From NCBI GenBank assembly GCA_047495785.1, contig JBLDXI010000036.1, forward strand, positions 248,001 to 312,000: a DNA stretch of 64,000 nucleotides, read 5' to 3'. This stretch comes from Lepidodermella squamata (lineage: Eukaryota; Animalia; Gastrotricha). The notes under the pieces are model-generated. The model worked only from the letters and a program-made list of their open reading frames with translations. It made no database searches and was not told where the DNA came from. The position numbers and the translations under genes were made by a program. Positions 22,965-46,141 of this stretch are shown in pieces (position 1 is the first letter of the stretch; the number at the start of each line of letters is the position of its first letter).

Positions 22965-23384
22965 CAGTGACTTTGATTTGATTTGATTTGATTTGATTTA
23001 TTCAGTAAGCCAAATCACAGGTCTTTGTAAATCAATCATTTCAAATGAAATCCCCAAAAATCGATAGTAAATCAAATCATCAGGCCCGTTTAAATCAAAT
23101 CAAATCAAATCTTTCACATAGGGAAACATGAGTATCATGGTAAATTTCTGGGGATTTTTTCAAATTTCAAGCATGGTTTTGACAGAATGAGTATGAAAGA
23201 GCATAAATAGCTCAAGGCAAATGTGAGTTCTCATGTTTAGTAACAGGGGGAATTCCGAGAGTTCTGATTTTTATAAATTAGCAGTAAATCAAGTTGGCTA
23301 AATTTGAATCAAATCAAATCATCCTGAAATTTTCTAAATCAAATCATTAAAAATGGCCTAAATCAAATCAAATCAAAGTCTCTG
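22965..23384. mobile_element. MITE with (GATTT)n/(AAATC)n subterminal arrays
   Basis: CAGTGACTTTGATTTGATTT... and ...AAATCAAATCAAAGTCTCTG inverted termini; related fragment near 18830. Confidence 0.65.
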
Positions 23385-23645
23385 CTTCGCCTAGTTCACA
23401 TCCCACTAAACTTACGGTTCGCCTGTGCCAGGCAGGAAGAAGTTGTCGACCATGAGCCAACCACATTCTGAAAAAATATAAAGAATAAATAAAAATTATA
23501 AATGTATTTAATTTTGTCTCGGGGGAAATAGTTTACCAAATTATTGAATTCTGTACCAAAAATCATCCACCGAATTATTCCAATGAAATCCCAAATTTTC
23601 TGACCCAGCTCTCAACCCTAACCTAACCCTAACCCTGACCAGTTA

Positions 23646-23747
23646 CCGTAAATTCCGAAACAAAAGCCCAGGCGCCAGGCGGCGCTCTTTGTCGGCACTT
23701 TGATGTTCTTTGTAGTGCCGCCTGGGCTTGTATTTGAATATTTACAG
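23646..23747. mobile_element. Short TA-flanked CCGTA-type palindromic MITE
   Basis: ta|ccgtaaattccgaaacaaaagcccaggcg ... cgcctgggcttgtatttgaatatttacag|ta. Confidence 0.6.
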
Positions 23748-25975: not shown

Positions 25976-28900
25976 CTAGTAAGACGTCTCGCACATGACG
26001 GCGCTTGCAAAATTGTCACAGGCAGTACTAGTCAGAGAGTGTTTGCCGTTTTCGTAATCGTATATCTCCAGGAAGACACAGCCTTCGCTCGTCGGACCAT
26101 GCCAGTCTGCTGCCTTGTAAGAGTAAACTGAACCGTCGTCCCACAGATACGTCCCATTTGCTGATCGAGTCAGGCCAACCCAAGCCTCATACAGTCCCTG
26201 GGCCTTAGCTGCCTGCTTGGCCAGCTCCATTTCTGCGTCCGTTTTCATCATTGCAAGACGGGCGCCTTGGTTGATGCACACTTGAACAGCTCCAGCATAC
26301 TCCCAGCTGTTAGCAAATAAAAACAAATTTCTTACAGTTACGGGCATAATTTTCTTTTCTGACCTATAACCCCAAATTGCTGGTCTAAATGCAAATTCAA
26401 TATTGTGAAAAGAGATTATTTCAGTGTTATACAGCTACAGCCATATTTTACTCCCGCCACAGCAATCCGAAGTAAGCAATACCCCCCGTTGATTAACTTA
26501 TGTGAATAAGAAAAGCTTACTTGACGCTTTCTCCGTCGTCGGTTTCCGAGTGGAAGAAATAATGCTTTACTGGGGCTTGGCAACTCAGCAAACTCGGGTA
26601 CTCATAATCTGCCGGGTAGCGAGTTTCACTGGCTGAACAGTTTCCGGCGCTGCTTAAACGGCAGTTGACAGTTTTATCAGCCGTTTCGCATCGGTAGTAA
26701 CTGAAGAATAACAAGAAAAATCATGACGCCAAGAAATTAAGCGCGCTCGAAATGCCTTGTAAACTAACTTTGACGTTCTGCAAGTTTTGAAATTGGCATA
26801 TTTGGTTACACCGCCATCCAACGCAACCTGTAGTGATAGATTGAAGCGTAATAACTTCGAGGTGATCACTTGAGAAAACGTTGCTTACAGTTGTATTCGG
26901 GCACGACAGAGATTGTGGAACGCAAACGGCATATAATTTAGTCGAGCTGTCAACACACTTGATGTAACTGTCCTGAAAAATCATAATCAATTCGATTCAA
27001 CTTCAATTTGAAGTTAATACCCCCAGCGTGTTTCGGCATATCGCGTAGCCTATGTAAACGGGAAAGTTCGCCACGATCCCGACCTGAAATTGCAATAGAC
27101 CGAGAAATCCTGTTGTATTGCTTTTCAAGTGTAACCTTCATGTTACCTCATACTTCGGGCAAACATCGAGACAAATGCCGCCGGTTGTTGCATCAAAGCA
27201 ATAGCGTACGGGCTGAAATTATAAAATATAATGATAACTGGTCTGCACAGCTGCTGCAAATGTTACGTCTAGCTCGCATCTCTGTTTAGTAAGATACACC
27301 ACTGGGCTTGCTGTAAAATTCTTGAGAAAAGCTTAATGATAGAAAAGTATCACGAGTTTCAATGCGCCAGTCTCACTGTATTGCATGTAGTCGGAGCTTC
27401 CTCGCACTCCAGATTATATTTATAAGTGTCCTGAGGGAAGCAGCGTCGATACGGATACATTTCAGGCGGGGCTGTTTGTTTGTTGGAAAAGACGTCAAAC
27501 TGACCAATTGACTGAAGTTAGAACTCACCAGTCGTGCAATCGTTTAGCGTATCGAAAGTTGCTCCTTCGATCGTTGCATTTGGGCACGTTGCGTTGTTCG
27601 AAGCAGGAATGCATTTCACGAGATCGAACGTGGTTTGATCCACGCAGAGTTTGTGAGGTTTCTAAGAATATCCGAAAATCAGAATAAGTAAACACAGGCT
27701 CGACTCACCAGAGCCGTGAGGCAGTCAGCGTAGTTGCTCGCAAAGTCCAGTTTCGAGTTGAATGTTGAAGCCTCAGTGGATGGTACATAGTTGTAGATAT
27801 TTTTCCCAAAAATCGAGAGTGCATTATTCAAATACATACCACTGTCATAGGTGAAGGGCAGCTATTGCGGCAAACCGAACCGTTCGACGATGAGCAAAGT
27901 GCAGCTGGCTGTGAATTATGAACAACAACTAACGTAATTTCAAAAATCAACGAATTCAACTTAAACTAACGCCGTTAATGCAGTGAGCTTTGTCCATATA
28001 AGTGTCAGGGCTGTATGTCTTCAAAAATATTGTGCAATTTCAAATTGATTTATTCGCGATTTTCCGTGGCTTACCTGAGTCGAGCTCGAATCGCAGGGCT
28101 TCGATTGGCAGCCGAGAAATGATAGATCACTTTGGAGGAAGCATCGGTTGTGCGGCAAGAAATCAGCGTCATTCCGTTTGACTGATGAGGGAATTTAGTT
28201 GAATTTGATCACTTCGAATTACATCCAGCTGTGATGGGTTTCGATCAACTTACTATTAGCCTGGGCCATGCAAGCAGAGGTTTTCGACCATGGGCCAACC
28301 GCAGTCTATAATGTAGAAATAAGGAATTAGACTCATTTGTTAAGAATTGTTAAGAATTTCCCATTCGATTCTGGTCTTTGAGCCTTGCTAACTTGTACTC
28401 ACCCCGTTGTTTGGGCATGGCCCATTGACAGGAATGCAAGTTTGCTGACCGTTGCTGTTGCAAAGCGTTGCTTTAGTATTCTGTCAACAATTATGAAAGG
28501 AAACCAGTGCGAGATCGAAAATTCGAGAGAAAATAAACGTACCAAAAAATTGCTTATAGTTGCTCTACAATTTTTGTATTGCGCCTCGAAATTGAAACCA
28601 AGAAATTCAGCGATCTAAATCATAAATAGAAAGTTGAATCTAAATGTACTGAAAATGTATTAGCGTACCATAACTTCATCAGTCTTTGAGCAACCAAGGT
28701 TTCGAGGGATACATCGCATGTTGATGGTTTTGAAGTTGAAACAGCTGCGGGCGGCCTTAAATGGGGCAATAATTTGAAATCGAAATTTGATCAAACTGAG
28801 AAAAGTCTCACTCCATCTAAACAACTAGCAGACGTTGGCAAAGCGAGGCCGAGCTGGAACAAATAAAGCTTTTGAACAAATGAATGAATAATTTAATAAT

Positions 28901-29054
28901 TTAACTCAACCTGGACTTCGTCGAGAAAAGAACAGGCAGTTTTACAACCCATAAAGTTATCATTGAGCCTTGAGAAACAACGCCTGTAGTCGGCTGAAAC
29001 GGCTACCCCAGCAGCTAGGCCAAATAATAAAATGAATTGCAGAATCGTAGCCAT
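25976..29054 (-). CDS. Cys-repeat stalk + CTLD protein, subfamily A (gene 6; spliced, extra intron in CTLD)
   Basis: MATILQFILLFGLAAGVAVSADYRRCFSRLND start, full stalk; CTLD split by a GT-AG intron (approx. 26309-26520), ending VMCETSY*. Confidence 0.85.
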
Positions 29055-29815
29055 CTAGTCAAGTTTATAAAAGATTATTAACAAAAATTGGCCACTATAA
29101 ATTTGAGAGAATAAGAATGAAATTCTAGTTTGAGAGCCTCTAAATAACGCCTTGAATTTGCAAGATCGCGTGGATTCAACACATTTTTTGTAAACAAGCT
29201 GTTGAACACGCGATTGATAATGCTCATCGCCCATTCATAATTTCAAATTTAGATGGGTTTTTTAGATTAAAATATTCGAAAAGTGACCTCATGCCTCTAG
29301 AAAATTCTAAAATTTGGTTCCGGAAAAAGGACGACCCTTCATCTTTGATGTGAGCTTAGGAGTATTTTCGAGTATCTCTCAGACTCAACAATTTCTCGCT
29401 GTAAGACGCTGTGAAATGCAGTCAATGTATTCCGCTGTATATTTTACTGTAAATTTTATGTTGACTAACACCCTTTCACAATCGCTCTTTTATTGGTACC
29501 TTCCATTCGAATTTTCGAAGTTTCCTCCGCTAACATAGTCAGGAAATTCGGCTGGCACAGATCTGTTAAGCCGTGTAAAGCTCAGATGCATTTCTATTGT
29601 CCGGAAACTTGGCTTGTCTGTTAAAACGGAATAATTTGCCTGATAAAAGTTTGCAGACGCTTAAATTTCAGCTTCGACAGACTGTTAAGCTGGATAGCAT
29701 GCCTTATTGTTCATTACAGCAGCAAGAAACAGCTTTTCCGCTGTATCCGACTAATTCCGAATTACAGAGGCGAAAAATCAGCTTAATACAGCCGGATCCT
29801 CAGCTGCGGAATGTG

Positions 29816-30151: not shown

Positions 30152-30596
30152 CTGAAAGACTCTTAAAATGGCGATTTTTCGTAAAAGTGACCAACTTTGA
30201 AATTTCTTTAAAAAAGTTAGAGAAAAAACCGTCTCATTAGACGGGGCTCATAGATAGAGGAGCGCTTCTACCGTAACGACGTGTATCTTTGGACAAAACG
30301 TGTTTTCGAACATTAAAAATCAGCCTTTGCTCCTACATTTCTGAAATTTTTACCAAACGTGGGGACGGTGATTCTTGAATTTACTGCTAATTTGTAAAAT
30401 TTTCAGAATTTTACCTGACCTTTGGCAAATTAATATGTGTTCCGGTAACTTTGGACAATTAGAGGGTAGCTTTGGACACTCATTTGCATATGCAATTTCA
30501 TTACAATTTCATTGTGAATTATCTGTTTTTCATGGTTTTTCATTTAATCATAAAATAATTATGAACAGATGGCGCATCATCTGTTTCTCGGAAGTT

Positions 30597-30998
30597 TGTC
30601 ACACTGAAACTTTTAGGAAACTAGTGAGTTCGACTGTGACGTTAAAGGTGTGATGTATCTTCTGTGATACCAGAAGATGAGTAGCCAACAAAAGGTAGCA
30701 AAGACGCTAATTCCAAGAGTTACCACTAAAGGTTTTATTAAACTCATAAACCAAAAGAGCTAATAACTTGTTGTTTCTCACACAATTTCCTCCTGCTTAT
30801 ATACAATACACTTGCGTCATTACCTGCGCATCTTCCTTGCCTCTGACGCACTTTGGTAACACCTTTGACGCACTTTGGTAACAGCTTGACGCACGTAACG
30901 GAAGTTCTGACGCACTTACCGGTACGTTTGTAGGATGCTGATTCACCGCTATGAATCATCGGTGTTAACTTGTTCTCAACCTTTTCAACCTTTTCACA
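30597..30998 (-). repeat. 3' LTR
   Basis: Direct repeat of 38075-38476, no differences seen by eye; preceded on the minus strand by the PPT. Confidence 0.97.
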
Positions 30999-31118
30999 CC
31001 TCCCCTCTAGTTTATACGTGAAACGTAAAATTTACCAGAAGTTAGGTATAAACGGTTTATTTAGAAAAGGTTATGTTATTCACAATATTTACAGCGTTAA
31101 ATGAAGTTTATCAGAGTA

Positions 31119-31823
31119 TTAGTACAGTTGAGGCACTACCGGTGTCGGCATGTACCCAAGACAATCGAGTTCGAGTAGAAGCTGGCGATCGTCGAGGTAG
31201 ATCGCTCGATCTAGTAGTCTGACGCATGGCACTTGTCGAAGACCGCCGTTGTGATGCACGTTGCAGTGCCAATCGTTGGCCATAAGCCTCAGATTGCACT
31301 GTCTAATAGTTGGCCAAAGATTGAGGTCATAGAAGGCCGGTAACTTGACGCGGATGTCCAGGCTACCTAAGTTGACCTCGAATCTCTCCGGCGTGTGCCC
31401 GACCAGGTTGGAGAAGCGTGCGATTGGATAGATTAAATCCACGGTTGCTGGAGTCGGTCGAATGACCCAGGTACGGTGGGTAAGCGTTTGAACAGCTCCC
31501 TCGTCGGCTGCTCCGCTAGGCAGAGTCGCCATCATTCGGAACGCCGACGGAACGCTCTCCATATGCTGACTTCTCCTCAAGGCCATCGGCTCCAATTGGT
31601 CAGACTGCAGCACAACTACTTGCGTTTGCTGAAAGGATGTCTCCAGTCCGCCGACAATGGTGATGGTGCCATCTTGGTGGTGGACGGGAGCAGCAACATT
31701 GGCGGCTTCTAGGCCATATTCGCCGTAGGAACCACCAGATTGTTCCGAACTGCTGCTTGTGGCGTCGGACGACGCCGGACTCTCTCGCATGGGTACTACG
31801 ATTGCCGTCGGCCGGATGCTCAT
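31119..31823 (-). CDS. Retroelement ORF4, unknown function (about 234 aa from first ATG)
   Basis: Uninterrupted sense-strand ORF between env-like ORF3 and the PPT; Ser-rich N-terminus, globular-looking C-terminal half; no motif recognised. Confidence 0.7.
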   Translation of the reverse strand: MSIRPTAIVVPMRESPASSDATSSSSEQSGGSYGEYGLEAANVAAPVHHQDGTITIVGGLETSFQQTQVVVLQSDQLEPMALRRSQHMESVPSAFRMMATLPSGAADEGAVQTLTHRTWVIRPTPATVDLIYPIARFSNLVGHTPERFEVNLGSLDIRVKLPAFYDLNLWPTIRQCNLRLMANDWHCNVHHNGGLRQVPCVRLLDRAIYLDDRQLLLELDCLGYMPTPVVPQLY

Positions 31824-31903
31824 ATGCTTAAACACAAAATTATAAATGATGTAGTTTGCTTAAATAACCTGGCGATCGTCCCAGAGACGTCGCATTTAGC
31901 TGC

Positions 31904-33172
31904 TTATATAGAGCTGCATATGGTATTTGGCTGTTTTCGTCGAAACACCTTTTTGGCGCGCGTCATAGGTTCGTAAATGTTGTCATGGCTTCGGTGTTGC
32001 CTTTCACACCCCATCTGAATATTCGTTAGGCACTTTAGGAGCACAAATATGATAATTGAGCTAAGGATGACCACAACAATGATACTCGCTCCCCACCAAG
32101 TTATCCCGGAATTGGTCATTTCAGGTGTAATTTCAAAAATTTGACACGATTTGACCATGGTGTGTCTAGGCAGCTCAATTTTTGAAGAATTAGGCTGCAT
32201 TAACATGTTTTTCCCGATGATAACAAAGGTCGAGGCGCTAAAACTGCCGTTGGTGATATTGACGTCACCTTCGACTTGTAGCATTTCGTGATTACCGCAT
32301 CCTATTGTGCCTGTCGCCAGAGTAATCAGTGTGGCTGATAGCAATTTGAGTGCAAAGCTTGTATGACTTACGTACGAAACCATTGTCGCTTTTGCTAGCC
32401 AGAAAGTGGTGTTGTTGATCTGTATCCATGGTGGTAGATTATCGCAGAAGTTGGCTGTTGCTTTGCATATGTTGAGTTGACTTGTTTCGTTCGTCGGATG
32501 CATCCAGTTGACCATAGTTCGACTCGTATATGCTTCCCAGGGGCATATCATTGTTTCATGTTTTCGATGGCACTTGTTGAGATTGGCATTGAGTATCTGA
32601 AACTGTCCGTCTTCACAATCTATAGCTGTGTAAAGATTTGTAAAGAGTAAAAATGGAGAGATGACACAATAATCATCTTCCTTAAAGTAGAGAGGAAAAA
32701 TATCCAAAATTTTACACGATTTTATCAGAGGGCTGTGACTTGGCGTAACAGTCTCCGATCGAATATGGCCATAATCTAAAGGAAACTTATTTGAGTTAAG
32801 CCAATCACTTACCCGCTGTGCCGTGTTATTGGATCGCTCTCGTTTTCGGCGCTTGAGAACCAAGGACCATTCTGGTTCCGAAGGCCATGATAGCGATTCA
32901 TGCTGCCTTCTGCGCCTGGCGTGTGCCGGTGTAGGACGTGCCATAGTCGTTGTCCTTGCGCTTGTCGTTGTTGTCCTTGTCGTAGTCACTGCGGTCGTTC
33001 TCCTTCTTCGAGTTGTCCATGGACTTGTCGCAGTTGTTTCGGAATTGTCTCGCGAGAATGTTATCGTTCGGCCTGGTCGAGTTATCACCAGTGTAGATAG
33101 CCATAAGTTGATTTCGTCGGTTGCCCCAGTAACTTCCACCATCGTTGCCATCAATACCAAAATCATCGTCAT
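31904..33172 (-). CDS. Retroelement ORF3, envelope-like type I membrane glycoprotein (422 aa)
   Basis: N-terminal hydrophobic signal, Thr-rich mucin-like tract, polybasic furin-like sites (RRRR, KRRKRER), Cys-containing ectodomain with many N-x-S/T sequons, TM helix WWGASIIVVVILSSIIIFVLL and a short tail; occupies the env position after pol. Confidence 0.8.
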   Translation of the reverse strand: MTMILVLMATMVEVTGATDEINLWLSTLVITRPGRTITFSRDNSETTATSPWTTRRRRTTAVTTTRTTTTSARTTTMARPTPAHARRRRQHESLSWPSEPEWSLVLKRRKRERSNNTAQRVSDWLNSNKFPLDYGHIRSETVTPSHSPLIKSCKILDIFPLYFKEDDYCVISPFLLFTNLYTAIDCEDGQFQILNANLNKCHRKHETMICPWEAYTSRTMVNWMHPTNETSQLNICKATANFCDNLPPWIQINNTTFWLAKATMVSYVSHTSFALKLLSATLITLATGTIGCGNHEMLQVEGDVNITNGSFSASTFVIIGKNMLMQPNSSKIELPRHTMVKSCQIFEITPEMTNSGITWWGASIIVVVILSSIIIFVLLKCLTNIQMGCERQHRSHDNIYEPMTRAKKVFRRKQPNTICSSI

Positions 33173-33204
33173 TTTTCCATACCTAGAAAACTCGAATAAT
33201 TAAT

Positions 33205-36200
33205 TTATGGCAATAGTTTACCTTTCATGGTCCTATCTAATCGTTCCCTAGTCGGAATTGACGGTTGTCTGGGATTTCGATAAGACCTAAATGGTGCCAT
33301 AGGATCCTTTTGTTCGAGTTGTTCAGGTTCTTCGAATTGTCGATCCAAATCGTCTTGCTCCAAATTTGCTGGTTCTGGGTCCAGTTCTGGTTCGTGAACG
33401 ACAACCAGTGGTGGCTGAGGTGGTACTGGTAGTACTGCAGGAGTTGGAACTAACGGTAGAGGCCTTGCCGGTATCACCGGTGACAAAGGGTCAATTGGCC
33501 TAGGAGCTCCAACTTCCTCAGCTGGCGATGTGTCGAATCGTTCTTGGTCCCAGAGAGATGCCAGCGTGTTGCTTCGCAAATTATAGGAATGGATCGGCGA
33601 ACTCGGTTGAGTCCTTTTCGTAGCAGATTTGGCCATTTTCGCAGATTCTGCTGTCTTTCCAGTTGCATTGTTTGGATCGTGCTGCGTCGCGTCGCTTTCA
33701 TCGTCGGTTTCGGCCGTTTGGTTTGCCATAGCCAGTTTGTCGACATTGCCATAGAAGGGTTTGAGCCGATTCCGATGAACTATTTTCGGTTTCTGCTTGC
33801 CATTAAGCAGTTGAATCTCGTAGTTGACTCCGATTCGTTGAAGAACGGTGTAAGGACCACGATATGGCGACCAGAATTTGCGTGGAGTTTTGGAAGCAGT
33901 TGGCATTTGTGGACAGTGAAGCCAGACTAGCATTCCTTCCTCAAATGGCTCTGCATTGCCTGCGTTTTTGTCGTAGATGGCCTTTTGTCGAGCTCTTGCG
34001 AGCTTCATTCGGTCATTCACGAGTTTGAACGCAGCTCGGAGATTACGATGTATCTTACATGCGTAATCATCGGTGCTTACAGGTTTGCCATTTTCGGGTT
34101 CCAGCAGATCACCAGGGATCCTAACTCTCCGTCCTGTAGCTAGGAACATAGGTTGCATATGATGGCTCGATTGGGTTGACGTGTTGAAAGCGAAGATTGC
34201 CGGAGCCAGCATATCGACCCATTTTCCGCTCGTTTTGTTGTTGAAAGAGTTGGCGATCATCGCCGCGATGACGGCCATGAATCTCTCGCATCCCCCATTG
34301 GCCATAGCGTGATAGGGAGAGATCCTAAGTTGCTTGATTTGCAGTAGTCGTTCCACTTCGCTTGCCAGCTTGCCAGATAGTTGCTTGCCGTTGTCAGAGA
34401 GAATTGCTCGAGGAAAGCCATGCAGGTAGCAAAATTCCAGCATTTTGTCTACAACTTTCTCAGCTGTGATAGTTCGTAAGGGCCAAGCCGCGAAGAATTT
34501 GCTGAAATGGTCCCCCATCACTAAGACAAATCGGTGCCCGTCGCAACTTTCGACTGGCCCCAAGATGTCCCACATGTAGATGTCTCCAAAGTAGTTGCTG
34601 ACAATTGGATGTAATTCGGCTACCGGATTCTTAATGGGACCTTTGCGCTGTTGGCAGGGAATACACTCCCTGACGTAGTCGGCGACAGTTGTTTCCATAT
34701 CCGGCCAAAAGAATCGCTCTTTGACGCGAGCTAATGTCCGGTCGAAACCCAAATGTCCGCCAACCTCGTCATGTAGGTGCTGAAGAGCCGTTTTGCGCAA
34801 GGTGATCGGTAGAGCGAATTGCTTCAATTCTCTGCTTGGATGGTTAGGATATCGGATTAGAAGTCCATTTTCCAAAGCGAATCTCCTGTCGAGTTGTTGA
34901 TTCGAAGCCAGTTTGCCGACAACGTCCTTGATCCATGGGTCGGCTTGTTGTTCGATCTTGAGTTGTTCCAGACTGATTCTTGGTTGGAGATTGATATTGA
35001 TCGCAGGACCCAGTCCTCGTTTTACTGGCGGTGCAGAGCGATCAGGTTTCCGGCTTAGAGCATCAGCATTGAGATGTTGTTTCCCAGGCTTATATTCAAT
35101 CTTGATGTTGTAATTGCTGAGAAGAAGAGCCCATCTGCTGATTCGCCCTCCGACATCCCTAAACTTGTTCATGTGTACAAGAGGATTGTGATCGACAACT
35201 ATAGTAACCTGACCTAAATCGGGTGAGTCGTTGATCATGGCATGTTGTTCTCGCGTCCTTATATAGGACTTGAAGAAAGATCGAAGCGAAGTTACTATGC
35301 CTAAAGCTTCGCGCTCTGTCGTGCTCATATTTCGCTCGGCCTTAGTTAGCGTTCTACTAGCGTATGCGACAGGGTGTTCCTCGCCGTTAGTAACTTGGCT
35401 TAGAACTGCCCCGATGCTGTGATCTGAGCTATCGCAGTGTATTCTAAAGGGTTTGCTAAAATCAGGGTAACTTAGGACAGGATATGTGGTGAGTTTAAGC
35501 TTCAAGAGATTGAAAGCCTTCTCAGCTTGATCCGTCCATACATAGTTTTGGGCTGATTTTCGCATGAGCGCAACTAGGGGTTCTGTTATTTCTGCGTAAG
35601 CATTAATGTACTTGCGATAATAGTTACAGATCCCCATAAAAGAGCGAAGTTCATGTATATCTTTAGGCCTATCATAATCTAGGATAGCAGCTACTTTCGT
35701 GCGCGAGGGAGAAACGCCTTGACTATTTACTCTAAAGCCTAAGAACTCAATCTCAGACTTGGCTAAGTGGCATTTAGAGCCGTTGAATTTTAGCTTAGCT
35801 ACGCGAAAGCGAGAAAATATTTCCCGTAAAAGTTCGAGATGTTCCTCGAAAGTTGTCGAGAAACAGGCTATATCATCCGCGTAAGTGACCACTTTATTAG
35901 TAGCGATTAAATCGCCTAAAGTGTCGTGCATAACTCTGCCCCATACTGCGGAAGAGTTAGTGCCCCCCATTATCACTCGTTGCCATTTCCAACAGCCTAA
36001 TGCTCCCCCGAGATCAAAGGACGTGAGATCTTGGGAGTTCGGGGTCAAACTTATGGACCAAAAGGCTTGTCCAACATCCATATTACTTATGAAACGGAAT
36101 GGCTTGCCTTGGTTACCTAGGCTATCTACACAGTCATCTAGACGATTTCCTGCATAGAGTTCTTTTTTCGAGTGATTATTTAATATGCGCGCGTCTAAAA

Positions 36201-37083
36201 CTAGCCTAATGTGCTTTTTATCAGCCTTAGGGATAATTTGGATGCCATTACGATGTTGCGATTTCGAAGGAGCAATGATTCCTGCTTTGTACAGTTCCTC
36301 AAGCTCCTTCTTTAGAAGAAGTTTTTCTACGTGCGAAAATCTACGCATAGGTTGCTTTATAGTTACCCCATCTGTTACGATAGAGTGTGCAAACTTGTCG
36401 TAGTTGCCTACATCGTATCTGTGGCGCATGAAAATGTCGCTAAATTCGTTAACTAGAGCTTTTAGTTTAAAACGCTGTTCTTCCGTAAGGCTAGGTTCGC
36501 TTAAGTCGACTTCGGGTTCCCATGGTTCTAGTTTAATGGAAGAGGGCCTCTTTGGAGCCGATTGCTCCTTCAGAGGAATATCTACGTAAGGATGTAGTGC
36601 GGCATGTTGACCTATGTTCAGGAGAACTGAGTCAGCTTTGCCATTTAAAAGTGAAATTTTGGAGCCATCCTTAAGAACTAGTTGCTTATTTTCCCAGTTA
36701 ATAGTTGAGGCATAATTATCTAAGAAGTCTGCCCCTATCAAGGCTGGCACGCACAGCCGATCTATAGCTAGAAATTCGTGCTGAAATGTGAGTTTTCCCA
36801 GTTTTCCTTGAAGACCTATAGATCCCCTGACCTTCAGGTTTGCACCGTCTGGTCCTATGGCTGAAGCCACCTTAAAAGCACTATTCTTGGGAACTAGAGA
36901 TGAACTAATGCAACTTTTAGCTGCCCCTGTATCTATCAAAGCTCTAATGGGTTTGTCCTTAATAACTATTTTAGCCATGAGTCCCTTGATCCCATTAATG
37001 CTAGGTATAAGGTTTGGGAATCTCGGGGAGATAGAGTACAGGCTTGCCTTATCCCCATTTAGGCTTGCCCGTCCTCGTTTCCC
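33205..37083 (-). CDS. pol: Pol polyprotein (protease, RT, RNase H, integrase), entered by -1 frameshift
   Basis: LIDTGA protease, YADD RT, CDSSD..GAVL RNase H, H-x5-H..CIPC zinc finger, D..SDNG..ER integrase core, GPY motif. The reading frame stays open from the GGGAAAC site to the annotated ATG at 36978. Confidence 0.96.
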   Translation of the reverse strand, partial: GKRGRASLNGDKASLYSISPRFPNLIPSINGIKGLMAKIVIKDKPIRALIDTGAAKSCISSSLVPKNSAFKVASAIGPDGANLKVRGSIGLQGKLGKLTFQHEFLAIDRLCVPALIGADFLDNYASTINWENKQLVLKDGSKISLLNGKADSVLLNIGQHAALHPYVDIPLKEQSAPKRPSSIKLEPWEPEVDLSEPSLTEEQRFKLKALVNEFSDIFMRHRYDVGNYDKFAHSIVTDGVTIKQPMRRFSHVEKLLLKKELEELYKAGIIAPSKSQHRNGIQIIPKADKKHIRLVLDARILNNHSKKELYAGNRLDDCVDSLGNQGKPFRFISNMDVGQAFWSISLTPNSQDLTSFDLGGALGCWKWQRVIMGGTNSSAVWGRVMHDTLGDLIATNKVVTYADDIACFSTTFEEHLELLREIFSRFRVAKLKFNGSKCHLAKSEIEFLGFRVNSQGVSPSRTKVAAILDYDRPKDIHELRSFMGICNYYRKYINAYAEITEPLVALMRKSAQNYVWTDQAEKAFNLLKLKLTTYPVLSYPDFSKPFRIHCDSSDHSIGAVLSQVTNGEEHPVAYASRTLTKAERNMSTTEREALGIVTSLRSFFKSYIRTREQHAMINDSPDLGQVTIVVDHNPLVHMNKFRDVGGRISRWALLLSNYNIKIEYKPGKQHLNADALSRKPDRSAPPVKRGLGPAININLQPRISLEQLKIEQQADPWIKDVVGKLASNQQLDRRFALENGLLIRYPNHPSRELKQFALPITLRKTALQHLHDEVGGHLGFDRTLARVKERFFWPDMETTVADYVRECIPCQQRKGPIKNPVAELHPIVSNYFGDIYMWDILGPVESCDGHRFVLVMGDHFSKFFAAWPLRTITAEKVVDKMLEFCYLHGFPRAILSDNGKQLSGKLASEVERLLQIKQLRISPYHAMANGGCERFMAVIAAMIANSFNNKTSGKWVDMLAPAIFAFNTSTQSSHHMQPMFLATGRRVRIPGDLLEPENGKPVSTDDYACKIHRNLRAAFKLVNDRMKLARARQKAIYDKNAGNAEPFEEGMLVWLHCPQMPTASKTPRKFWSPYRGPYTVLQRIGVNYEIQLLNGKQKPKIVHRNRLKPFYGNVDKLAMANQTAETDDESDATQHDPNNATGKTAESAKMAKSATKRTQPSSPIHSYNLRSNTLASLWDQERFDTSPAEEVGAPRPIDPLSPVIPARPLPLVPTPAVLPVPPQPPLVVVHEPELDPEPANLEQDDLDRQFEEPEQLEQKDPMAPFRSYRNPRQPSIPTRERLDRTMKGKLLP

Positions 37084-38012
37084 TGATTGGCAGGTGAACT
37101 AGGTGGTCTAAAAGATCTACGGTTCCCCCAGTTCCTATTTCCTAATCCCCTCCCCCCTGAAAACCTAGGTGGGCGTCGACATTCGCTTTTCCTATGGCCT
37201 GGAAGGTTACAGTTCCAACAGGTGATCGGTCGGCGAGCCGCATGAGGTTCTTCGAACCGCATTTGGCCCACTTTATCAGTCAACTGTTTTATCGCCTCGT
37301 TTTGTGCCTTCGTTGTCTCAGATTGAGAAACTAGGGCGTTTATAAGGCGACTGGCGTGATCGGTCAGATCCGATTCGCCTGGATTCTGTAGAGCGTTAAT
37401 AATAGTATTTCCTAGATTGCTTAGCCTATCGGCGCGTTCTGCCTTTTCTGCGCGCGTGGTGATTGCCTCAATATCAGCAGGGTCACCCTCCTTATAGACT
37501 GCTACCCTTAACTCTGGTCTAAGGCCTAATGCATACCTGTTCAGCAACTTGCCGTCGAAGATCGATTTGAGCGCTACCGTGCCATCCTCGTAGCCAGCTT
37601 GATAAAGAAGCCGTTTGAGAGCTGTTAAATACTCCCGAACAGATTCTCCAGATTGCTGCGATCGTGCCATGAAAGCCATCTCGCTGAGCGCCTTGTCGGG
37701 TTGAAGATTGGCACCTTGCTCAAGGATAGTCCTCACTTGAGACAGTTTGGTGCTGGTGGGCGCATTCGGTGATTCTTGCCATACTTCCAGAAGGCGACCG
37801 GTAAGGTACAGCGGTAACACGGCTATAACCTTGCGTCTTGCCTGTAAGGCTAATGACTCGGTACCGTCCAGATTGCTGTCAGGGTCCTCGTCTTTGGCTC
37901 CGCATGCACGGGCCAGAGCTGAGAACTGCTGCCAGCTTTCGTGGAATTTCTCGTAATTGGTACCAGAAATTTTCGGGAACGCGTTAAGCGATCGTTGAAT
38001 TTCGAAAGCCAT
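37059..38012 (-). CDS. gag: Gag with CCHC zinc knuckle
   Basis: Q..GESVREY major-homology-like segment; CWNCNLPGHRKSEC knuckle; lies upstream of pol. Confidence 0.93.
   Translation of the reverse strand: MAFEIQRSLNAFPKISGTNYEKFHESWQQFSALARACGAKDEDPDSNLDGTESLALQARRKVIAVLPLYLTGRLLEVWQESPNAPTSTKLSQVRTILEQGANLQPDKALSEMAFMARSQQSGESVREYLTALKRLLYQAGYEDGTVALKSIFDGKLLNRYALGLRPELRVAVYKEGDPADIEAITTRAEKAERADRLSNLGNTIINALQNPGESDLTDHASRLINALVSQSETTKAQNEAIKQLTDKVGQMRFEEPHAARRPITCWNCNLPGHRKSECRRPPRFSGGRGLGNRNWGNRRSFRPPSSPANQGNEDGQA
37077..37083 (-). promoter_or_regulatory. -1 ribosomal frameshift slippery site G GGA AAC
   Basis: XXXYYYZ heptamer in the gag frame just before the gag stop; the -1 frame continues into pol; a possible downstream stem (ggggata...tatctcccc). 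Confidence 0.8.
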
Positions 38013-38074
38013 TCGAGAGAATTAATTTTAGAAGAGTTTTAAGAAAACTAAGCTCACAGTGGCCAACAATTTTA

Positions 38075-38476
38075 TGTCACACTGAAACTTTTAGGAAACT
38101 AGTGAGTTCGACTGTGACGTTAAAGGTGTGATGTATCTTCTGTGATACCAGAAGATGAGTAGCCAACAAAAGGTAGCAAAGACGCTAATTCCAAGAGTTA
38201 CCACTAAAGGTTTTATTAAACTCATAAACCAAAAGAGCTAATAACTTGTTGTTTCTCACACAATTTCCTCCTGCTTATATACAATACACTTGCGTCATTA
38301 CCTGCGCATCTTCCTTGCCTCTGACGCACTTTGGTAACACCTTTGACGCACTTTGGTAACAGCTTGACGCACGTAACGGAAGTTCTGACGCACTTACCGG
38401 TACGTTTGTAGGATGCTGATTCACCGCTATGAATCATCGGTGTTAACTTGTTCTCAACCTTTTCAACCTTTTCACA
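38075..38476 (-). repeat. 5' LTR with TGACGCA repeats, TATATAA and AATAAA
   Basis: Direct repeat of 30597-30998; on the minus strand four TGCGTCA motifs precede TATATAAGCAG (approx. 38271-38281) and AATAAA (approx. 38212-38217). Confidence 0.97.
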
Positions 38477-39920
38477 AGTTCAATAAAAATACGTTTCCGC
38501 GCAGCAGCATACTTAAACCATCCAAAAGTGTCCAAAATTACCCCAATTTTCACCTGTTTTTCAGGTGAATGCCCTGCTAAAACGCGTCGACGGATTGTAA
38601 TTTTTTCTTCGATTATAGGAAGAGTAAAGATAGGAGAATACTTATGCCAACTTTTATTGAAAACTGTTCGATTTTTAGAAAGATAGAAGGGGGGTCCCAA
38701 AACGGCTCCCAAAGTCTAACTACTTTTTCTGAAATTCGATTTCAGCTCCAATCGTCTTGATTTTTATGTCAAACGAAAGCTGAAGAGACGGAGAATTTTA
38801 TGCAAACACCCCCATGATTTAAACGTTCAACCCTGAAAAGCTAAACACCTGCAAAGTTGAAAGTGTCCAAAGTTACCGTGTCCACAATCACCACACGTTA
38901 CGGTAGTTTCCTGTAAATTTGTGGGAAATGAAACATTTTCTCTGGGAATTTTAGAAAATAATTAAAAATCGGAAAAATTACAATGGGCGGATAGGGCGAT
39001 GAGTGAATAAAAATGAAGGTCGCGTGCCCACTTTTTCATGTGTTGGTGTGAATTTATTTACTATAGGAAGATCGCTAGTTTCCGATCTTTATAGAGTTGT
39101 CTATGCCGAGGGTAATATTTTTGTCACATTGCGTAATGTAAAAAGGCATGATTTAAGGCGGAAATTTGCTAAGAATACCTAAGAAAAGTAGGCTGAAAGA
39201 CCCAATATTATTGCTCCTTGAAAACTGTTTCAGCCATGTCAAGCCTAATTGCCCTAGGCAGCCATTACCGAATATTCACATCTAGCGCTAATATTCATGA
39301 AAATAAACGGTTTTAAATGGGCCCAGGGGTGATATCCTCAGTTTTCTACCTCTATCTCCGACCACTTAATTGTGTTAGAAAAGTGAAAAGTGGTAGATTA
39401 GAAGTGTCAGCGACACTGCACTAATCGCTACCTAGCCGTCCGCCTGAAAACACCTAAACAAGCGACCCTAACAGTGTTCATTCGGCCCTTCCATTAAACG
39501 AATGGAGTCCACGAATGTCTCAAGATGAATCCATTTTTTTTCTTTAAAATATGAGAGCTATCAGCTTATTCATTCAGAACCAAATTCCAGGTTCCCATGA
39601 CGCGGAGTTTTATTCATAATCGCATCAAATCTAAGTAATAGACTATAGACAGTATCAGTCATTTTTTGATGAACAGAACCGAAACGAAAAACATATGGGT
39701 ATTGACCTTGGGGTTTTCCCCACTGAAGCAAATCGATAAAGAAGAAAGTCACAACTGATTTAATTAATTATTACAAGCTCGCGCTGTTAAGCTGTTAGCT
39801 TGTAATATAATGAAGACGTTTCGCATGAAAAATCATCACGTGGAATATTCGTCAGAGATTTGTCGTTTTTAACGTAGGTAATCATATTTAGGCAGAAAGA
39901 GACAGCGGTCGTTCGTCGAA

Positions 39921-42535
39921 TCATGCCAATCGACAAGTTTGAAAATCGTCATATTTAGTTACACCGCCATCCAACGCAACCTGTAGTCAACAATTGAAGC
40001 ACAAATACTTCGAGGTGATAGTTTCAGAAAAAGTTGCTTACGGTAGTATTCGGACATGGCAGCACTTGTGGGACGCAAACGGCATATGATTTAGTCGTGG
40101 TGTCGACGCACTTGATGTGGCGGTCCTATTAAATGATAGCCGTCAAGAGTACTCGAAACGTCAATATAATTTTTTTACCCCCATAATATTACGGCAAATC
40201 GAGAAAGTTATCCCAATGTTATTGTAATCTGCGATCCCAACCTAAAATCGCTGTGCGCAAGAAATAATTGCTCAATAATATCAAAGTTCATACTTACGTC
40301 ATACTTGCCGATTCCTGTTTCGCAAACATCTTGACAGATACCACCGGTTGTAGCATCATAGCAAAAGCGCATGGGCTGAAATGGCTTAGTTAAAAGAAAC
40401 GTGTTCGAAAATTATGAACCATTATTACCCCACGATCGCAGCTCTCCTTGGTGAGATACAAAATTGGGCTGGGCGTATAAAGCTTGTCGAAAGCAATGAA
40501 TGAGTAATCATTAATCATCGTGATTTTATATACAAAATTCTCACATTAGTCGCATTGCACGTTGTCGGAGCTTTTTCGCAAGTGGCAAACTCAAGAGGAG
40601 TCTGCCGGAAGCAGCGGCGATACGGATACATTTCGGACGAGGCTGAATTGAGGAAAAGATAATAACTCATAACATACGGTAGTTGAAACTCACCAGAATT
40701 GCACTCGTTGAAGGTGTTGAACGTGGCTCCTTCGATTGTTCCATTAGGACACGAGGCGTTGTTCGAAACGGGCAAACATTTCACGAGGGCGAACGTGGTT
40801 TCATCGACGCACAGTTTGTGAGGTTTCTAACAAGTTGAAAGAAGTAAGATTGCTGAGCTAGTTTCGAGCTAATCGACCAACCAATGCAGCTGCGAGACAA
40901 TCAGCGTAGTTATTAGCAAATTCCGGTTTCGAGTTGAATGTTGACGCCTGAGGAAGTAGTACACCACAACATTATAGATTCTAAATTGCATTAGGGTATT
41001 ATTGAGGAACATACGACTGTCATTGAGGAGGGGCAGCTACCGCCGCAAACCGAGCCATTAGTCGAAGAGCAAAGCGCGGCCGGCTGTTGAATTTCAAAGA
41101 AAAATTAATTTGAATTTCTTTAATAAAAGATCCAACTCCGATAATGCAGTGAGCTTTGTCCATGTAGGTCAGAGGGCTGTAGGACTGGATAGAAAATATT
41201 TCAGCTTCATGAAATAATTCGATTAATGACTGGGTATTCTATACCTGAGTCATGTTGGTCGAATTACAGGGCTTGGATTGGCAGCCGACAAAGGACCGGT
41301 CGCTTTGAAGGAAGCATCGATTATGCGGCAGGAAATCAGCGTCATTGCGTTTGACTGATAGGGAAAACGAGATGAATTTATTAATTTCCCATTTTCGCGT
41401 CAAACCAGCTGTGGCAGGTTTTTACTCAAGCTCAACTCACTGTTAGCCGCGGCCATGCAGGCAGAAGTTGTCGACCATGAGCCAACCGCAGTCTGTAAAA
41501 CAAAGGATTTAGTTCCTGAGTTGACTCATCTGAAAATCTCATGAAATGAATACCCAGTTCAGCTCAATTAAATAGTGATTTTGATCATTGAATACAATTG
41601 AAATGAAAATTCGGATTTTTCTTGAAATCTAGAAAATTTTTAAATTCATTGAATTCTTCAAATTCTCGGCTGAAATTATCTGAAATTTTTGCTGAATTGT
41701 TTTTGAAGCTCTGAATTCTAAAAAAAATTGAAATTAAAAAATTAATACATTTTAATTTTAAAATATGTATAGTAAAATTTAAATTATAACACCATCGCTA
41801 TGAGCCAAAAATCGAAGAATTTTAAATTTTGCCGAAAAAGTCTGTTATCAAAGAGCCTGAAAAATTGATTCGAGGCCATGAATTTCGATCAGTCGTACTT
41901 ACCCCGTTGTTTGGGCATGGCCCATTGACAGGAATGCAAGTTTTCTGGCCGTTGCTGCTACAAAGCGTTGCTTTAGTATTCTGTCAAAAATCATGCATAT
42001 GAATCGAAGTAGCGGCAGAAAATAAACCCACCAAAAAAGTATTAATAGTTGCTCTACAATTCATGAATTGCGCCTCGAAATTGAAACCAAGAAATTCAGC
42101 GGTCTAAATGATAAACGTAAAATTAAAATTCATATTCATAGTTCATCTGCGTACCAGAATTTCATCGGTCTTGGAACAGCCAAGGTTTCGAGGGATGCAT
42201 CGCATGTTGATGGTTTTGAAGTTGAAACAGCTGCGGGCGGCCTTAAATGGGGCAATAATTTGAAATTGAATTTGATTAATATTAAGAAAGGCTCACTCCA
42301 TCCAAACAACTAGCAGACGTTGGCAAAGCGAGTCCGAGCTGGAACAATTCGAGTTTAAAAAATGTCGTGAATAAATCGATTAATTAATCCTCACTTGGAC
42401 TTCGTCGAGAAAAGAACAGGAAGTTTTACAGCCCATAAAAGTATCATTGAGCCTTGAGAAGCAGCGCTTGTAGTCGGCTGAATAGGCCACTCCAGCCAGG
42501 CCAAGTATCAAAATCAAGCGCAGAGTTGTAGACAT
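39921..42535 (-). CDS. Subfamily A gene 7: stalk-only (CTLD deleted) protein or young pseudogene
   Basis: MSTTLRLILILGLAGVAYSADYKRCFSRLND start, full stalk; the last stalk exon VALDGGVTKYDDFQTCR runs into LA* and is followed by CTLD debris (attggcatg = IGM; tgcgaaacg = CET). Confidence 0.7.
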
Positions 42536-42985
42536 TGTCGAAGTCGAAAAAAATTAAGGTAAAAATAATGCTTGAATAATCTTGAAAATAAATAATGAAT
42601 TTTTATTATGAGTGCTATAAAATAATGCTCTATTTGTGAAATAAAAAGTTTATAGATCGCGTGTATTCTGATAATTCACCGTAAACAAGAAGAGCACACG
42701 ATGACCATGCTCTACGCCCATTGATAATTTAATTTGAGGGCGTTTTTCACCTTAATAATAGTGGAAATAAAAATCTAACAAAAATCCAATAACATCTTTA
42801 ATTTCGGCTCATATTACGAACTTGATAATAAATAGTATAACAACGAACCCAAAAAAATCACCTGTAGTACAGCCCGCATGATCAGATTCATTGGCATTTG
42901 ACATTTCTTTGCCTTGGTGGGAAGTGTGAGGTTGTTTAAGTTCGAGCGCTGACACTCAGTATCACTGGCATTACCCAATTTACAA

Positions 42986-45776: not shown

Positions 45777-46141
45777 TTAAAGTTTGATGTAGGTTGAATC
45801 TATTGGTTCCGGTTCAGCTTCCAGATATCCAAGTGGCCAACATCCATCTGACATCCTACAAATCTTATTTTTGCGTGATACGAACGCACTGCACAAGGGG
45901 TTTTTGCGGCAAATGTCGGCGCATTGATCAAGGGTTGCAGCCAGAGTAGGAGAAGTTCCCACCCAATAACCACTCAAATGTCCATCCCAGCAATACTGCT
46001 TCGTATACTTGAATCCTGCGGGATCTGAAGAAAATGATACTAGTCAGTTTTGTAAAGTCGACTTCAAACCACCGCTGTAAACTTGCCCTTAGCTGCAGCT
46101 AGCCCGATAACCATACCGAAGACGAGAACTGACTTGAACAT
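45777..46141 (-). CDS. Small secreted PAN/Apple-domain protein (2 exons, about 100 aa)
   Basis: MFKSVLVFGMVIGLAAAK signal exon joined through a phase-1 GC-AG intron to DPAGFKYTKQYCWDG...TLDQCADICRKNPLCSAFV...KICRM..., the PAN C-x3-C-x5-C-x-AF..C pattern. Confidence 0.7.

What the first reader, a model, noticed from the sequence alone, without database searches (positions are those of the whole stretch)
30597..38476. Young, intact four-ORF retrovirus-like Ty3/gypsy element (gag, pol, env-like, plus an extra ORF4)
Seen: LTRs identical by eye, intact TSD and PPT, open gag and pol, and two further long sense ORFs between integrase and the 3' LTR. Known: Ty3/gypsy elements normally have gag-pol, and errantivirus-like ones add a single env. 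Inferred: a recently active, possibly infectious endogenous retrovirus-like lineage with a captured two-gene accessory cassette.
Basis: partly seen in the sequence, partly recalled or inferred. Interest (0 to 1): 0.9.

Follow-up and report, generated by a model that had tools for sequence, protein, structure and literature searches.

The report
Young four-gene gypsy-like retroelement
A freshly inserted, fully intact Ty3/gypsy retrovirus-like element sits between lectin genes of an unidentified animal and carries, besides gag and pol, a membrane-glycoprotein gene and a fourth gene that match no known envelope or accessory protein family.

Summary
On the minus strand at 30597-38476 lies a 7880-bp LTR retroelement. 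It has two 402-bp LTRs that are 100% identical, TG..CA ends, a 4-bp target duplication (AGTT) and a polypurine tract. Four non-overlapping sense ORFs are open, and no gene is broken. Gag has a CCHC knuckle. Pol (PR-RT-RNaseH-IN) lies in the -1 frame behind a G GGA AAC heptamer, and its best solved-structure match is yeast Ty3.

The lineage is poorly sampled: the nearest database Pol is 35% identical overall and about 39% in RT-RNaseH.

ORF3 (422 aa) has envelope-like topology: a signal-like N-terminus, a mucin-like stretch, basic cleavage motifs, nine ectodomain cysteines, seven sequons, a C-terminal anchor. It matches no F-, gB-, Gc- or retroviral Env family and has no hydrophobic peptide after a cleavage motif. 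Its only relative is one unnamed cluster that shares seven of those cysteines.

ORF4 (238 aa) is an orphan, but stop depletion and codon periodicity show it is coding.

"Env" and "captured cassette" therefore remain inference. Verdict: a new variant of a known kind, of moderate interest.

The parts
30593..30596 (.). Target-site duplication, left copy (AGTT)
   Evidence: the same 4 bases directly flank both ends of the element.
30597..30998 (-). 3' LTR (402 bp, TG..CA ends)
   Evidence: 100% identical to 38075-38476, and the match ends exactly at both boundaries.
30999..31008 (-). Polypurine tract abutting the 3' LTR
   Evidence: AGAGGGGAGG lies immediately 5' of the LTR on the sense strand.
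31119..31835 (-). ORF4, 238 aa (first ATG at 31823). A soluble orphan protein: no membrane segment, no sequon, 4 Cys in the C-terminal 60 aa, GC 55%.
   Evidence: coding tests. No homologue.
31900..31910 (-). TATA-like 11-mer identical to the LTR's TATA box. It overlaps the ORF3 stop, about 80 nt upstream of the ORF4 ATG. Candidate internal promoter (idea only).
   Evidence: in the whole 64-kb window this 11-mer occurs only here and in the two LTRs. The local alignment score is not above the shuffle range.
31904..33172 (-). ORF3, 422 aa, a predicted type-I membrane glycoprotein: signal-like N-terminus, S/T-rich stretch (aa 36-80), three R-x-K/R-R motifs (aa 55, 86, 108), 9 ectodomain Cys, 7 N-x-S/T sequons, anchor at aa 355-388, and a tail of about 34 aa.
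   Evidence: The only relative is the P0121 cluster.
33205..37098 (-). pol reading frame. It is open from 37098, its ATG is at 36978, and it gives 1257 aa from the ATG. Domains: PR 36703-36975, RT 35728-36234, RNase H 35110-35538, IN zinc domain 34642-34809, IN core 34309-34572, IN C-terminal SH3/GPY module 33757-33930, then a proline-rich tail of about 180 aa.
   Evidence: Pfam; frame open upstream of the ATG; Ty3 Gag-Pol 7q5b, E 2.3e-71. DTG, YADD, HHCC and D,D35E motifs were read directly in the translation.
37059..37098 (-). gag/pol overlap. pol is in the -1 frame relative to gag, and a canonical slippery heptamer, G GGA AAC, lies in the gag frame at 37077-37083.
   Evidence: The downstream hairpin is only weakly supported (z = -1.6).
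37059..38012 (-). gag, 317 aa, with one CCHC zinc knuckle (aa 263-279)
   Evidence: Its relatives occur in gag-pol proteins of the P0009 cluster and of the sponge Ephydatia.
38048..38065 (-). Candidate primer-binding site: a TGG-initiated stretch 9 nt after the 5' LTR
   Evidence: It could not be matched to a tRNA because the window holds none.
38075..38476 (-). 5' LTR. U3 holds four copies of GTGCGTCA spaced 21-22 nt apart. The TATA box starts at 38281 and AATAAA at 38217.
38477..38480 (.). Target-site duplication, right copy (AGTT)

Best explanation
This is an autonomous Ty3/gypsy (Metaviridae-type) LTR retroelement from a deep, so far unsampled lineage. It integrated very recently into the spacer between two members of a tandem C-type-lectin gene array in an unidentified animal.

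Shown by the sequence: complete LTR-PBS-gag-pol-ORF3-ORF4-PPT-LTR anatomy with every catalytic motif intact, pol in the -1 frame behind a canonical slippery heptamer, and two further ORFs that are genuinely coding.

Inferred from established knowledge of LTR retroelements: transcription starts at the TATA box in the 5' LTR and ends after the AATAAA in the 3' LTR. Gag is translated directly, and Gag-Pol arises by -1 ribosomal frameshifting. Reverse transcription is primed at the PBS and the PPT. Integrase makes the 4-bp duplication.

Inferred, less firmly: ORF3 is a furin-processed, heavily glycosylated type-I membrane protein with a previously undescribed cysteine-rich ectodomain fold. It is made from a subgenomic message and fills the envelope-like slot, mediating exit or cell-to-cell passage. 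ORF4 is a soluble accessory protein, possibly transcribed from its own TATA-like element.

My estimates for the separate claims: intact young Ty3/gypsy element 0.97; ORF3 a real membrane glycoprotein gene 0.85; ORF4 a real gene 0.75; ORF3 acting as an envelope or fusogen 0.35.
For: Anatomy:
- The LTRs are identical over 402 bp, with a TSD and TG..CA ends.
- The PPT, TATA box and AATAAA are present.

Gag and Pol:
- Pfam finds PR, RT, RNase H and IN in that order, plus a CCHC Gag.
- The best solved-structure match is Ty3 Gag-Pol (E 2.3e-71), ahead of retroviral and caulimoviral polymerases.
- pol is in the -1 frame with a G GGA AAC heptamer in the 40-nt overlap.
- The nearest Pol is 35% identical overall and about 39% over RT-RNaseH among 115 comparable hits.

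ORF3:
- It has an anchor helix, 7 sequons, 9 ectodomain Cys and 3 basic cleavage motifs.
- Seven of those Cys align with Cys in all four members of the only related cluster. The library E-value is 4.2e-4 and the pairwise E-value is 2e-10.

Coding status of ORF3 and ORF4:
- Both have 0 in-frame stops, against 6-37 in each of their other frames.
- Codon-position periodicity was reached by 0 of 2000 shuffles.
- ORF4's open run was reached by 1 of 5000 shuffles.
- ORF4's codon usage correlates with pol's only in frame.

Host context: C-type-lectin ORFs and 6-fold repeated exon blocks. The spacing across the element (about 13.2 kb) equals a normal unit plus the element, and no conserved block is interrupted.
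Against: - ORF3 has no homology to Baculo_F or paramyxovirus F, herpes gB, phlebovirus Gc or retroviral Env, even at E up to 10. It also does not match the F-domain-bearing insect protein P0112.
- No hydrophobic stretch follows any basic motif, and the only hydrophobic 19-mer is the anchor.
- The structured ectodomain is only about 230 aa, shorter than known F or gB ectodomains.
- The P0121 relatives have no strong membrane segment.
- Single-sequence AlphaFold models are uninformative: pLDDT is 39.7 for ORF3 and 32.1 for ORF4.
- No second copy was available, so selection on ORF3 and ORF4 is untested.
- The PBS-like TGG sits 9 nt from the LTR, which is further than usual.
- The frameshift hairpin is weak.
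- The ORF4 promoter idea rests on an 11-mer whose alignment score lies within the shuffle range.
Confidence: 0.6

Rival explanations
1. The element is a strictly intracellular retrotransposon, and ORF3 and ORF4 are accessory genes unrelated to envelope function. They might serve membrane targeting of assembly, host-factor binding or evasion of silencing, like the varied non-env ORF3s of bdelloid rotifer elements.
For: ORF3 matches no envelope family and lacks a fusion-peptide-like segment. Rodriguez et al. 2017 (PMC5408684) show that membrane segments, sequons and cleavage motifs had misled earlier 'env' calls, and that ORF3 can safely be called env only when a viral source is traceable. ORF4 has no membrane feature at all.
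Against: The full set of features, signal-like start, mucin-like region, basic motifs, disulphide-rich ectodomain, single C-terminal anchor and short tail, is what viral glycoproteins look like. The gene also sits in the env slot directly after pol.
Confidence: 0.3
2. ORF3 and/or ORF4 are recent passengers: pieces of host or foreign genes picked up by template switching in this copy or a small subfamily. They would not yet be decayed only because the insertion is so young.
For: ORF4 is the most GC-rich part of the element, with GC 55% and GC3 60% against 44-51% for the other genes. A 15-nt near-identical direct repeat brackets most of ORF4, with about 0.1 expected by chance. With identical LTRs, decay has had no time to act, so intactness alone says little about function.
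Against: No donor gene was found in the window or in the protein databases. ORF4's codon usage correlates with pol's in frame. The layout is compact and non-overlapping, with gaps of 32 and 68 nt. Gag is also 51% GC, so the compositional contrast is modest.
Confidence: 0.12
3. ORF4, or both extra ORFs, are chance open frames in a long 3' untranslated region.
For: Neither ORF has a database relative of any weight, and both structure models are disordered.
Against: ORF4's open run was reached by 1 of 5000 local shuffles. Codon-position periodicity was reached by 0 of 2000 shuffles for both ORFs. Both have 0 in-frame stops against 6-37 in each of the other five frames. Seven ORF3 cysteines are conserved in a distant relative.
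Confidence: 0.03

Closest known systems
Env-carrying Ty3/gypsy elements of metazoans ('errantiviruses' in the sense of Chary & Hayashi 2026, PMC13524379; Drosophila gypsy, ZAM and Idefix are the classic cases)
   Same: LTR-gag-pol-third-ORF layout. The third ORF is a signal-plus-anchor glycoprotein placed after pol. Copies are intact and young. A Ty3/gypsy pol.
   Different: Their Env is recognisably F-type, with a conserved furin site followed by a hydrophobic fusion peptide, or gB-type. ORF3 here is neither by sequence and lacks the peptide. The passages of that survey read or term-searched here mention no fourth ORF. This Pol is no closer than about 39% in RT-RNaseH to anything retrieved.
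Bdelloid rotifer LTR retrotransposons Vesta, Juno and TelKA (Rodriguez, Kenefick & Arkhipova 2017, PMC5408684)
   Same: Gypsy-like elements with TG..CA LTRs, near-identical LTR pairs and a gag-pol frameshift. They carry a surprising variety of extra ORFs, including short cysteine-containing transmembrane ORF3s of unknown origin.
   Different: Those lineages carry a dUTPase between PR and RT, which is absent here. Their extra ORFs are GDSL esterase, DEDDy exonuclease or paramyxovirus-like F, and none of these matches ORF3 or ORF4.
Yeast Ty3 (solved Gag-Pol/intasome 7q5b and RT 4ol8)
   Same: It is the best solved-structure match across RT-RNaseH-IN, with the same domain order and a GPY-type integrase C-terminus.
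   Different: From my own knowledge: Ty3 has only gag and pol, uses a +1 frameshift, makes 5-bp duplications and targets tRNA genes. Here the frameshift is -1, the duplication is 4 bp, and there are two extra genes.
Complex retroviruses with accessory genes downstream of env, some driven by an internal promoter (spumaviruses). A functional analogy only.
   Same: The gene order is gag-pol-env-accessory. There is a possible second TATA element at the env/accessory junction.
   Different: This element is not a member. Pol matches Ty3 far better than foamy-virus polymerases. The internal promoter is an idea only and is not shown.
Plant LTR retrotransposons with additional ORFs (review PMC7264820, seen only as a search hit)
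   Same: Extra ORFs of unknown function lie between pol and the 3' LTR.
   Different: The host kingdom differs, and no sequence relationship was found. I did not read that paper beyond its abstract.

Membership tests
Ty3/gypsy (Metaviridae-type) LTR retrotransposons | Direct LTRs with TG..CA termini and a 4-6 bp target-site duplication | tested here: met
   402-bp identical LTRs, TG..CA ends, 4-bp AGTT duplication.
Ty3/gypsy (Metaviridae-type) LTR retrotransposons | pol domain order PR-RT-RNaseH-IN, with Pol nearest to Ty3/gypsy polymerases | tested here: met
   (Pfam domain order). (Ty3 Gag-Pol E 2.3e-71; retroviral RTs 1e-33 or weaker). (all hits are gypsy-type).
Ty3/gypsy (Metaviridae-type) LTR retrotransposons | Gag with a nucleocapsid zinc knuckle | tested here: met
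   a CCHC knuckle at aa 263-279. The Retrotrans_gag match is weak (E 0.0023, below the curated cut-off).
Ty3/gypsy (Metaviridae-type) LTR retrotransposons | A PBS complementary to the 3' end of a host tRNA next to the 5' LTR, and a PPT next to the 3' LTR | tested here: inconclusive
   The PPT is present. A TGG-initiated stretch lies 9 nt after the LTR, but the window holds no tRNA gene to compare it with.
Errantivirus-type elements with F-type Env | The third ORF is homologous to baculovirus or paramyxovirus F | tested here: not met
   No Pfam hit to any F family at E up to 10. No PDB hit. No similarity to the F-domain-bearing P0112.
Errantivirus-type elements with F-type Env | A conserved furin site followed directly by a hydrophobic fusion peptide | tested here: not met
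   three R-x-K/R-R motifs exist, but the only hydrophobic 19-mer is the C-terminal anchor. The residues after each motif are polar.
Errantivirus-type elements with gB-type Env | The third ORF is homologous to herpesvirus gB, with a five-domain ectodomain | tested here: not met
   No gB hit in Pfam or PDB. At 422 aa, ORF3 is about half the length I expect of gB, from my own knowledge of gB.
Errantivirus-type elements (any Env) | The third ORF has a signal peptide and a C-terminal membrane anchor flanking an ectodomain | tested here: met
   a hydrophobic N-terminus, and an anchor at aa 355-388 predicted as a confident helix.
Chromoviruses | A chromodomain C-terminal to the integrase | tested here: not met
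   no chromodomain. The 180-aa tail is proline-rich and has no match.
Troyka | 3-bp duplications and CG..CG termini (PMC12440569) | tested here: not met
   a 4-bp duplication and TG..CA termini. Definition taken.
Rotifer Vesta/Juno/TelKA lineages | A dUTPase domain between PR and RT | tested here: not met
   no dUTPase hit in pol. Definition taken.
Named Metaviridae clades (Mag, Cer, CsRn1, Mdg, Gmr1 and others) | Placement in an RT phylogeny with named reference elements | not tested
   The reference sequences are virus-like elements of animals and were not fetched. Among the proteins the searches returned, none is closer than about 39% in RT-RNaseH, and the nearest named ones are from the sponge Ephydatia.

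The most novel reading that the evidence does not exclude
This is a 'complex' metavirus: a deep Ty3/gypsy lineage whose envelope slot holds a new class of small, cysteine-rich glycoprotein (not F, gB, Gc or retroviral Env) and which also carries a separately transcribed accessory gene. That would be a gene plan otherwise known only from complex vertebrate retroviruses. If the host proves to belong to a phylum where env-carrying gypsy elements have not been found (the nearest named Pol relatives are from sponges), it would also extend their known range.
Probability: 0.15. Interest if true: 0.8.

Novelty: new variant of a known kind. Interest (0 to 1): 0.5.

Why it matters
Retroviruses are thought to have arisen when gypsy-like elements acquired envelope genes. 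The recent metazoan survey (PMC13524379) found only two envelope types, F and gB, and argued that they were acquired anciently. An intact, just-inserted element whose post-pol genes belong to neither type suggests one of two things. Either there is a third, unrecognised source of envelope-like genes, or membrane glycoproteins in the env slot can serve another purpose. It also carries a fourth gene with good coding signatures. It is a clean natural example for asking how retroelements gain accessory genes. The insertion lies about 1.3 kb upstream of a lectin gene in a tandem immune-type gene array, so it may also affect expression of its neighbours.

Tried and rejected
Searches that found nothing:
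- Word-indexed protein searches with ORF3 and ORF4 found nothing. That tool only sees proteins 0.55-1.75 times the query length.
- The one full HMMER scan went to ORF3 and gave a single marginal hit. ORF4 therefore never had a sensitive scan.
- Pfam at E up to 10, NCBIfam, PHROGs and PDB sequence searches gave only noise for both ORFs. The New_glue hit reflects threonine-rich composition. A profile of ORF3 plus its four relatives also found nothing.
- The relative P0121 itself has no Pfam or PDB match.
- Exact look-up shows none of the four proteins is in the collection. Cluster look-up of the best hits gave no organism names.
- The window contains no other copy, solo LTR or fragment, and no paralogue of ORF3 or ORF4.
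- The four proteins show no similarity to one another.

Structure:
I did not send them to fold search, because matches to such models are meaningless.

Weak signals:
- The frameshift-stimulating structure is only weakly supported.
- The TATA-like 11-mer before ORF4 is unique to that spot and the LTRs, but its alignment score lies within the shuffle range.

Rejected readings:
- ORF4 as a broken-off end of env. ORF3 already ends with an anchor, a tail and a stop.
- Troyka, chromovirus and the rotifer lineages (see the membership tests).

For a base count only, the two host flanks were pooled; nothing was saved.

Full report
THE OBSERVATION. A direct repeat of 402 bp (30597-30998 and 38075-38476) is 100% identical, and the match stops abruptly at both ends. 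The repeat begins TG and ends CA. The four bases AGTT flank the element on both sides, at 30593-30596 and 38477-38480.

On the sense strand the 5' LTR holds four copies of an 8-mer (GTGCGTCA) spaced 21-22 nt apart. It also holds a TATA box starting at 38281 and an AATAAA starting at 38217. A purine run, AGAGGGGAGG, abuts the 3' LTR. A TGG-initiated stretch lies 9 nt inside the 5' LTR. It could not be matched to a tRNA, because ARAGORN and Rfam find no RNA gene in the window.

Four non-overlapping sense ORFs fill the interior:
- gag, 38012-37059
- pol, 36978-33205
- ORF3, 33172-31904
- ORF4, 31835-31119

None of the four genes is broken. I count 0 stops, 0 unprogrammed frameshifts and no recognisable insertion or deletion.

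GAG AND POL. Gag carries one CCHC knuckle. Pol carries protease, RT, RNase H, the integrase zinc domain, the integrase core and a C-terminal SH3/GPY module, in that order. The DTG, YADD, HHCC and D,D35E motifs can all be read in the translation. There is no chromodomain and no dUTPase. The last 180 residues or so are proline-rich and match nothing.

The pol frame is open for 40 codons upstream of its ATG and overlaps the end of gag by 40 nt in the -1 frame. Within the overlap the gag frame reads G GGA AAC, a canonical -1 slippery heptamer. The predicted downstream hairpin is not distinguishable from shuffled sequence (z = -1.6).

Among solved structures the best match by far is yeast Ty3 Gag-Pol (7q5b, E 2.3e-71, spanning RT to IN), followed by Ty3 RT. 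Foamy-virus, caulimovirus and gammaretrovirus polymerases score 1e-33 or weaker. The element is therefore a Ty3/gypsy retroelement.

HOW WELL SAMPLED IS THE LINEAGE? The best Pol hits among 5.8 billion clusters are 35% identical. Over the RT-RNaseH stretch the nearest of 115 comparable hits is about 39% identical, and all hits are roughly equidistant. The nearest named ones come from the freshwater sponge Ephydatia muelleri. Trichuris, amphibian and fish gypsy-like proteins lie a little further away. Gag has relatives in the same unnamed clusters and in Ephydatia.

None of the element's four proteins is in the collection as an exact sequence, and cluster look-ups gave no organism names. So the host genome is evidently not in these databases, and the element is a long branch. 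I did not place it among named Metaviridae clades. The reference sequences are virus-like elements of animals, and I did not fetch them.

ORF3. The protein begins with a hydrophobic, signal-like stretch. An S/T-rich, mucin-like region follows at residues 36-80. There are three R-x-K/R-R motifs, at residues 55, 86 and 108. The ectodomain has nine cysteines and seven N-x-S/T sequons. A single strong hydrophobic segment at 355-388 is the only part AlphaFold predicts with confidence, as a helix. A tail of about 34 residues follows. That is the topology of a viral type-I glycoprotein, in the position where env sits.

Homology gives no support for the env reading, however.
- The word-indexed search found nothing.
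- Pfam at E up to 10 gives only compositional noise, with no F, gB, Gc or retroviral Env family.
- PDB gives noise.
- ORF3 does not match the one insect Pol-plus-Baculo_F protein that the Pol search returned.
- No hydrophobic peptide follows any basic motif. The survey of metazoan env-carrying gypsy elements describes a furin site followed by a fusion peptide as highly conserved in F-type Env (PMC13524379).

The full HMMER scan of 1.84 billion representatives returned one protein, P0121 (393 aa, E 4.2e-4). The pairwise alignment has E 2e-10 over residues 153-295. Seven of ORF3's nine ectodomain cysteines align with cysteines in all four members of that cluster. I take this as true but remote homology, defining an uncharacterised disulphide-rich domain. 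P0121 itself has no Pfam or PDB match and no strong membrane segment. A 29-nt internal repeat encodes a short K-S-C-x-I motif at both edges of this core.

ORF4. This ORF has no membrane segment, no sequon and four cysteines in its last 60 residues. It is the most GC-rich part of the element: GC 55% and GC3 60%, against 44-51% for the other genes. Nothing matches it in any library, and its single-sequence model is uninformative.

It is nevertheless coding, on four counts:
- It has 0 in-frame stops, against 6-12 in each of the other five frames.
- Its open run was reached by 1 of 5000 shuffles of its own region.
- Its codon-position periodicity was reached by 0 of 2000 shuffles.
- Its codon usage correlates with pol's only in frame.

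Two small observations bear on how ORF4 is expressed or how it arrived. First, the 11-mer that forms the LTR's TATA box recurs exactly once more in the 64-kb window. It overlaps the ORF3 stop, about 80 nt before the ORF4 ATG. Second, a 15-nt near-identical direct repeat brackets most of ORF4. Neither is statistically compelling, and I record both as ideas.

Upstream of ORF3 there is an acceptor-like pyrimidine-AG site and a three-codon upstream ORF whose stop overlaps the ORF3 ATG.

CONTEXT. The window is a tandem array of paralogous multi-exon genes with C-type-lectin domains (Pfam hits in three ORFs). Exon-sized blocks recur six times at spacings of 4.4-7.5 kb. The spacing across the element is about 13.2 kb, which is one normal unit plus the element. 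No conserved block is interrupted. The element lies in the spacer, in the same orientation as the genes, roughly 1.3 kb upstream of one paralogue and 1.5 kb downstream of the next. The lectin domains and short introns point to an animal host, which I could not identify.

AGE. Zero differences in 402 bp means the insertion is very recent on an evolutionary scale. I cannot give a date without the host's mutation rate. This is inference.

WHAT IT MOST LIKELY IS. It is an autonomous, just-integrated Ty3/gypsy element of an unsampled deep lineage, with the usual life cycle: LTR transcription, Gag and frameshifted Gag-Pol, tRNA- and PPT-primed reverse transcription, and integration with a 4-bp duplication. 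It carries two additional real genes.

I think it most likely that ORF3 is a processed, glycosylated membrane protein serving an envelope-like role, and that ORF4 is an accessory protein. The envelope role is inferred from topology and position only, and I give it about 0.35. Rodriguez et al. (PMC5408684) caution that such features misled earlier env calls in rotifer elements.

The rivals are a non-envelope accessory pair (0.3), recent passengers (0.12) and chance ORFs (0.03).

COMPARISON WITH WHAT IS KNOWN. Env-carrying gypsy elements are now known across most animal phyla, with F- or gB-type Env in GAG-POL-ENV or GAG-ENV-POL order. The survey did not find them in sponges or echinoderms (PMC13524379). 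Extra ORFs in LTR elements are known from rotifers and plants. This element fits the general kind but fails the F- and gB-type tests and adds a fourth gene. I found no described family with this layout in two literature searches. That is weak negative evidence. I rate it a new variant of a known kind.

STEPS LEFT OUT.

Alignment tools printed summary lines that I did not use. I noticed no slip. For transparency, pooled the two host flanks for a base count only.

Noticed in passing
window 700-5250 (+), then minus-strand units at about 17300-19750, 21800-24800, 26800-29250, 39900-42550, 54800-56900 and 62200-64000; lectin ORFs at 4718-5218, 50582-51169 and 58925-59434: The whole window is a tandem, partly inverted array of paralogous multi-exon genes ending in a C-type-lectin domain. 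Exon-sized blocks are 60-89% identical between units. The retroelement sits in one spacer, in the same orientation as the genes.
   Followed up: partly
window 12237-13169 and 52159-53068: A segment of about 0.9 kb is present twice in inverted orientation, 71-82% complementary. The copy at 52 kb carries a 299-aa ORF (52397-53296, +) with no Pfam match. It could be another repeat family or another paralogous gene.
   Followed up: no
window 11071-11849; also 59695-60178, 46132-46640, 61535-61713: Foldback structures. The largest has 210-nt arms that are 98% complementary, with a 359-nt loop. The smaller ones are 88-92% complementary. They resemble MITE-like or hairpin repeats.
   Followed up: no
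window 38329-38393 (5' LTR) and the same positions in the 3' LTR: Four copies of GTGCGTCA spaced 21-22 nt apart in U3. Two of them lie inside an exact 17-nt tandem unit upstream of the TATA box. They look like repeated factor-binding sites.
   Followed up: partly
window 32129-32157 and 32699-32727: A 29-nt direct repeat (83% identical) inside ORF3. It encodes the same short K-S-C-x-I motif at both edges of the cysteine-rich core, which hints at an internal duplication of a module.
   Followed up: partly
window 31179-31193 and 31866-31880: A 15-nt direct repeat (14 of 15 bases identical) brackets most of ORF4. About 0.1 such pairs are expected by chance in this 2.3-kb stretch. It could be a trace of how ORF4 was acquired.
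   Followed up: no
window 33169-33184: An acceptor-like pyrimidine-AG site and a three-codon upstream ORF whose stop overlaps the ORF3 start codon (ATGA). This arrangement is compatible with a spliced message or with termination-reinitiation.
   Followed up: no
window 31055-31061: An AATAAA lies 60 nt after the ORF4 stop and before the 3' LTR. Together with the TATA-like 11-mer at 31900-31910 it frames ORF4 like a separate transcription unit. The count of AATAAA in the element is what composition predicts, so this may be chance.
   Followed up: partly
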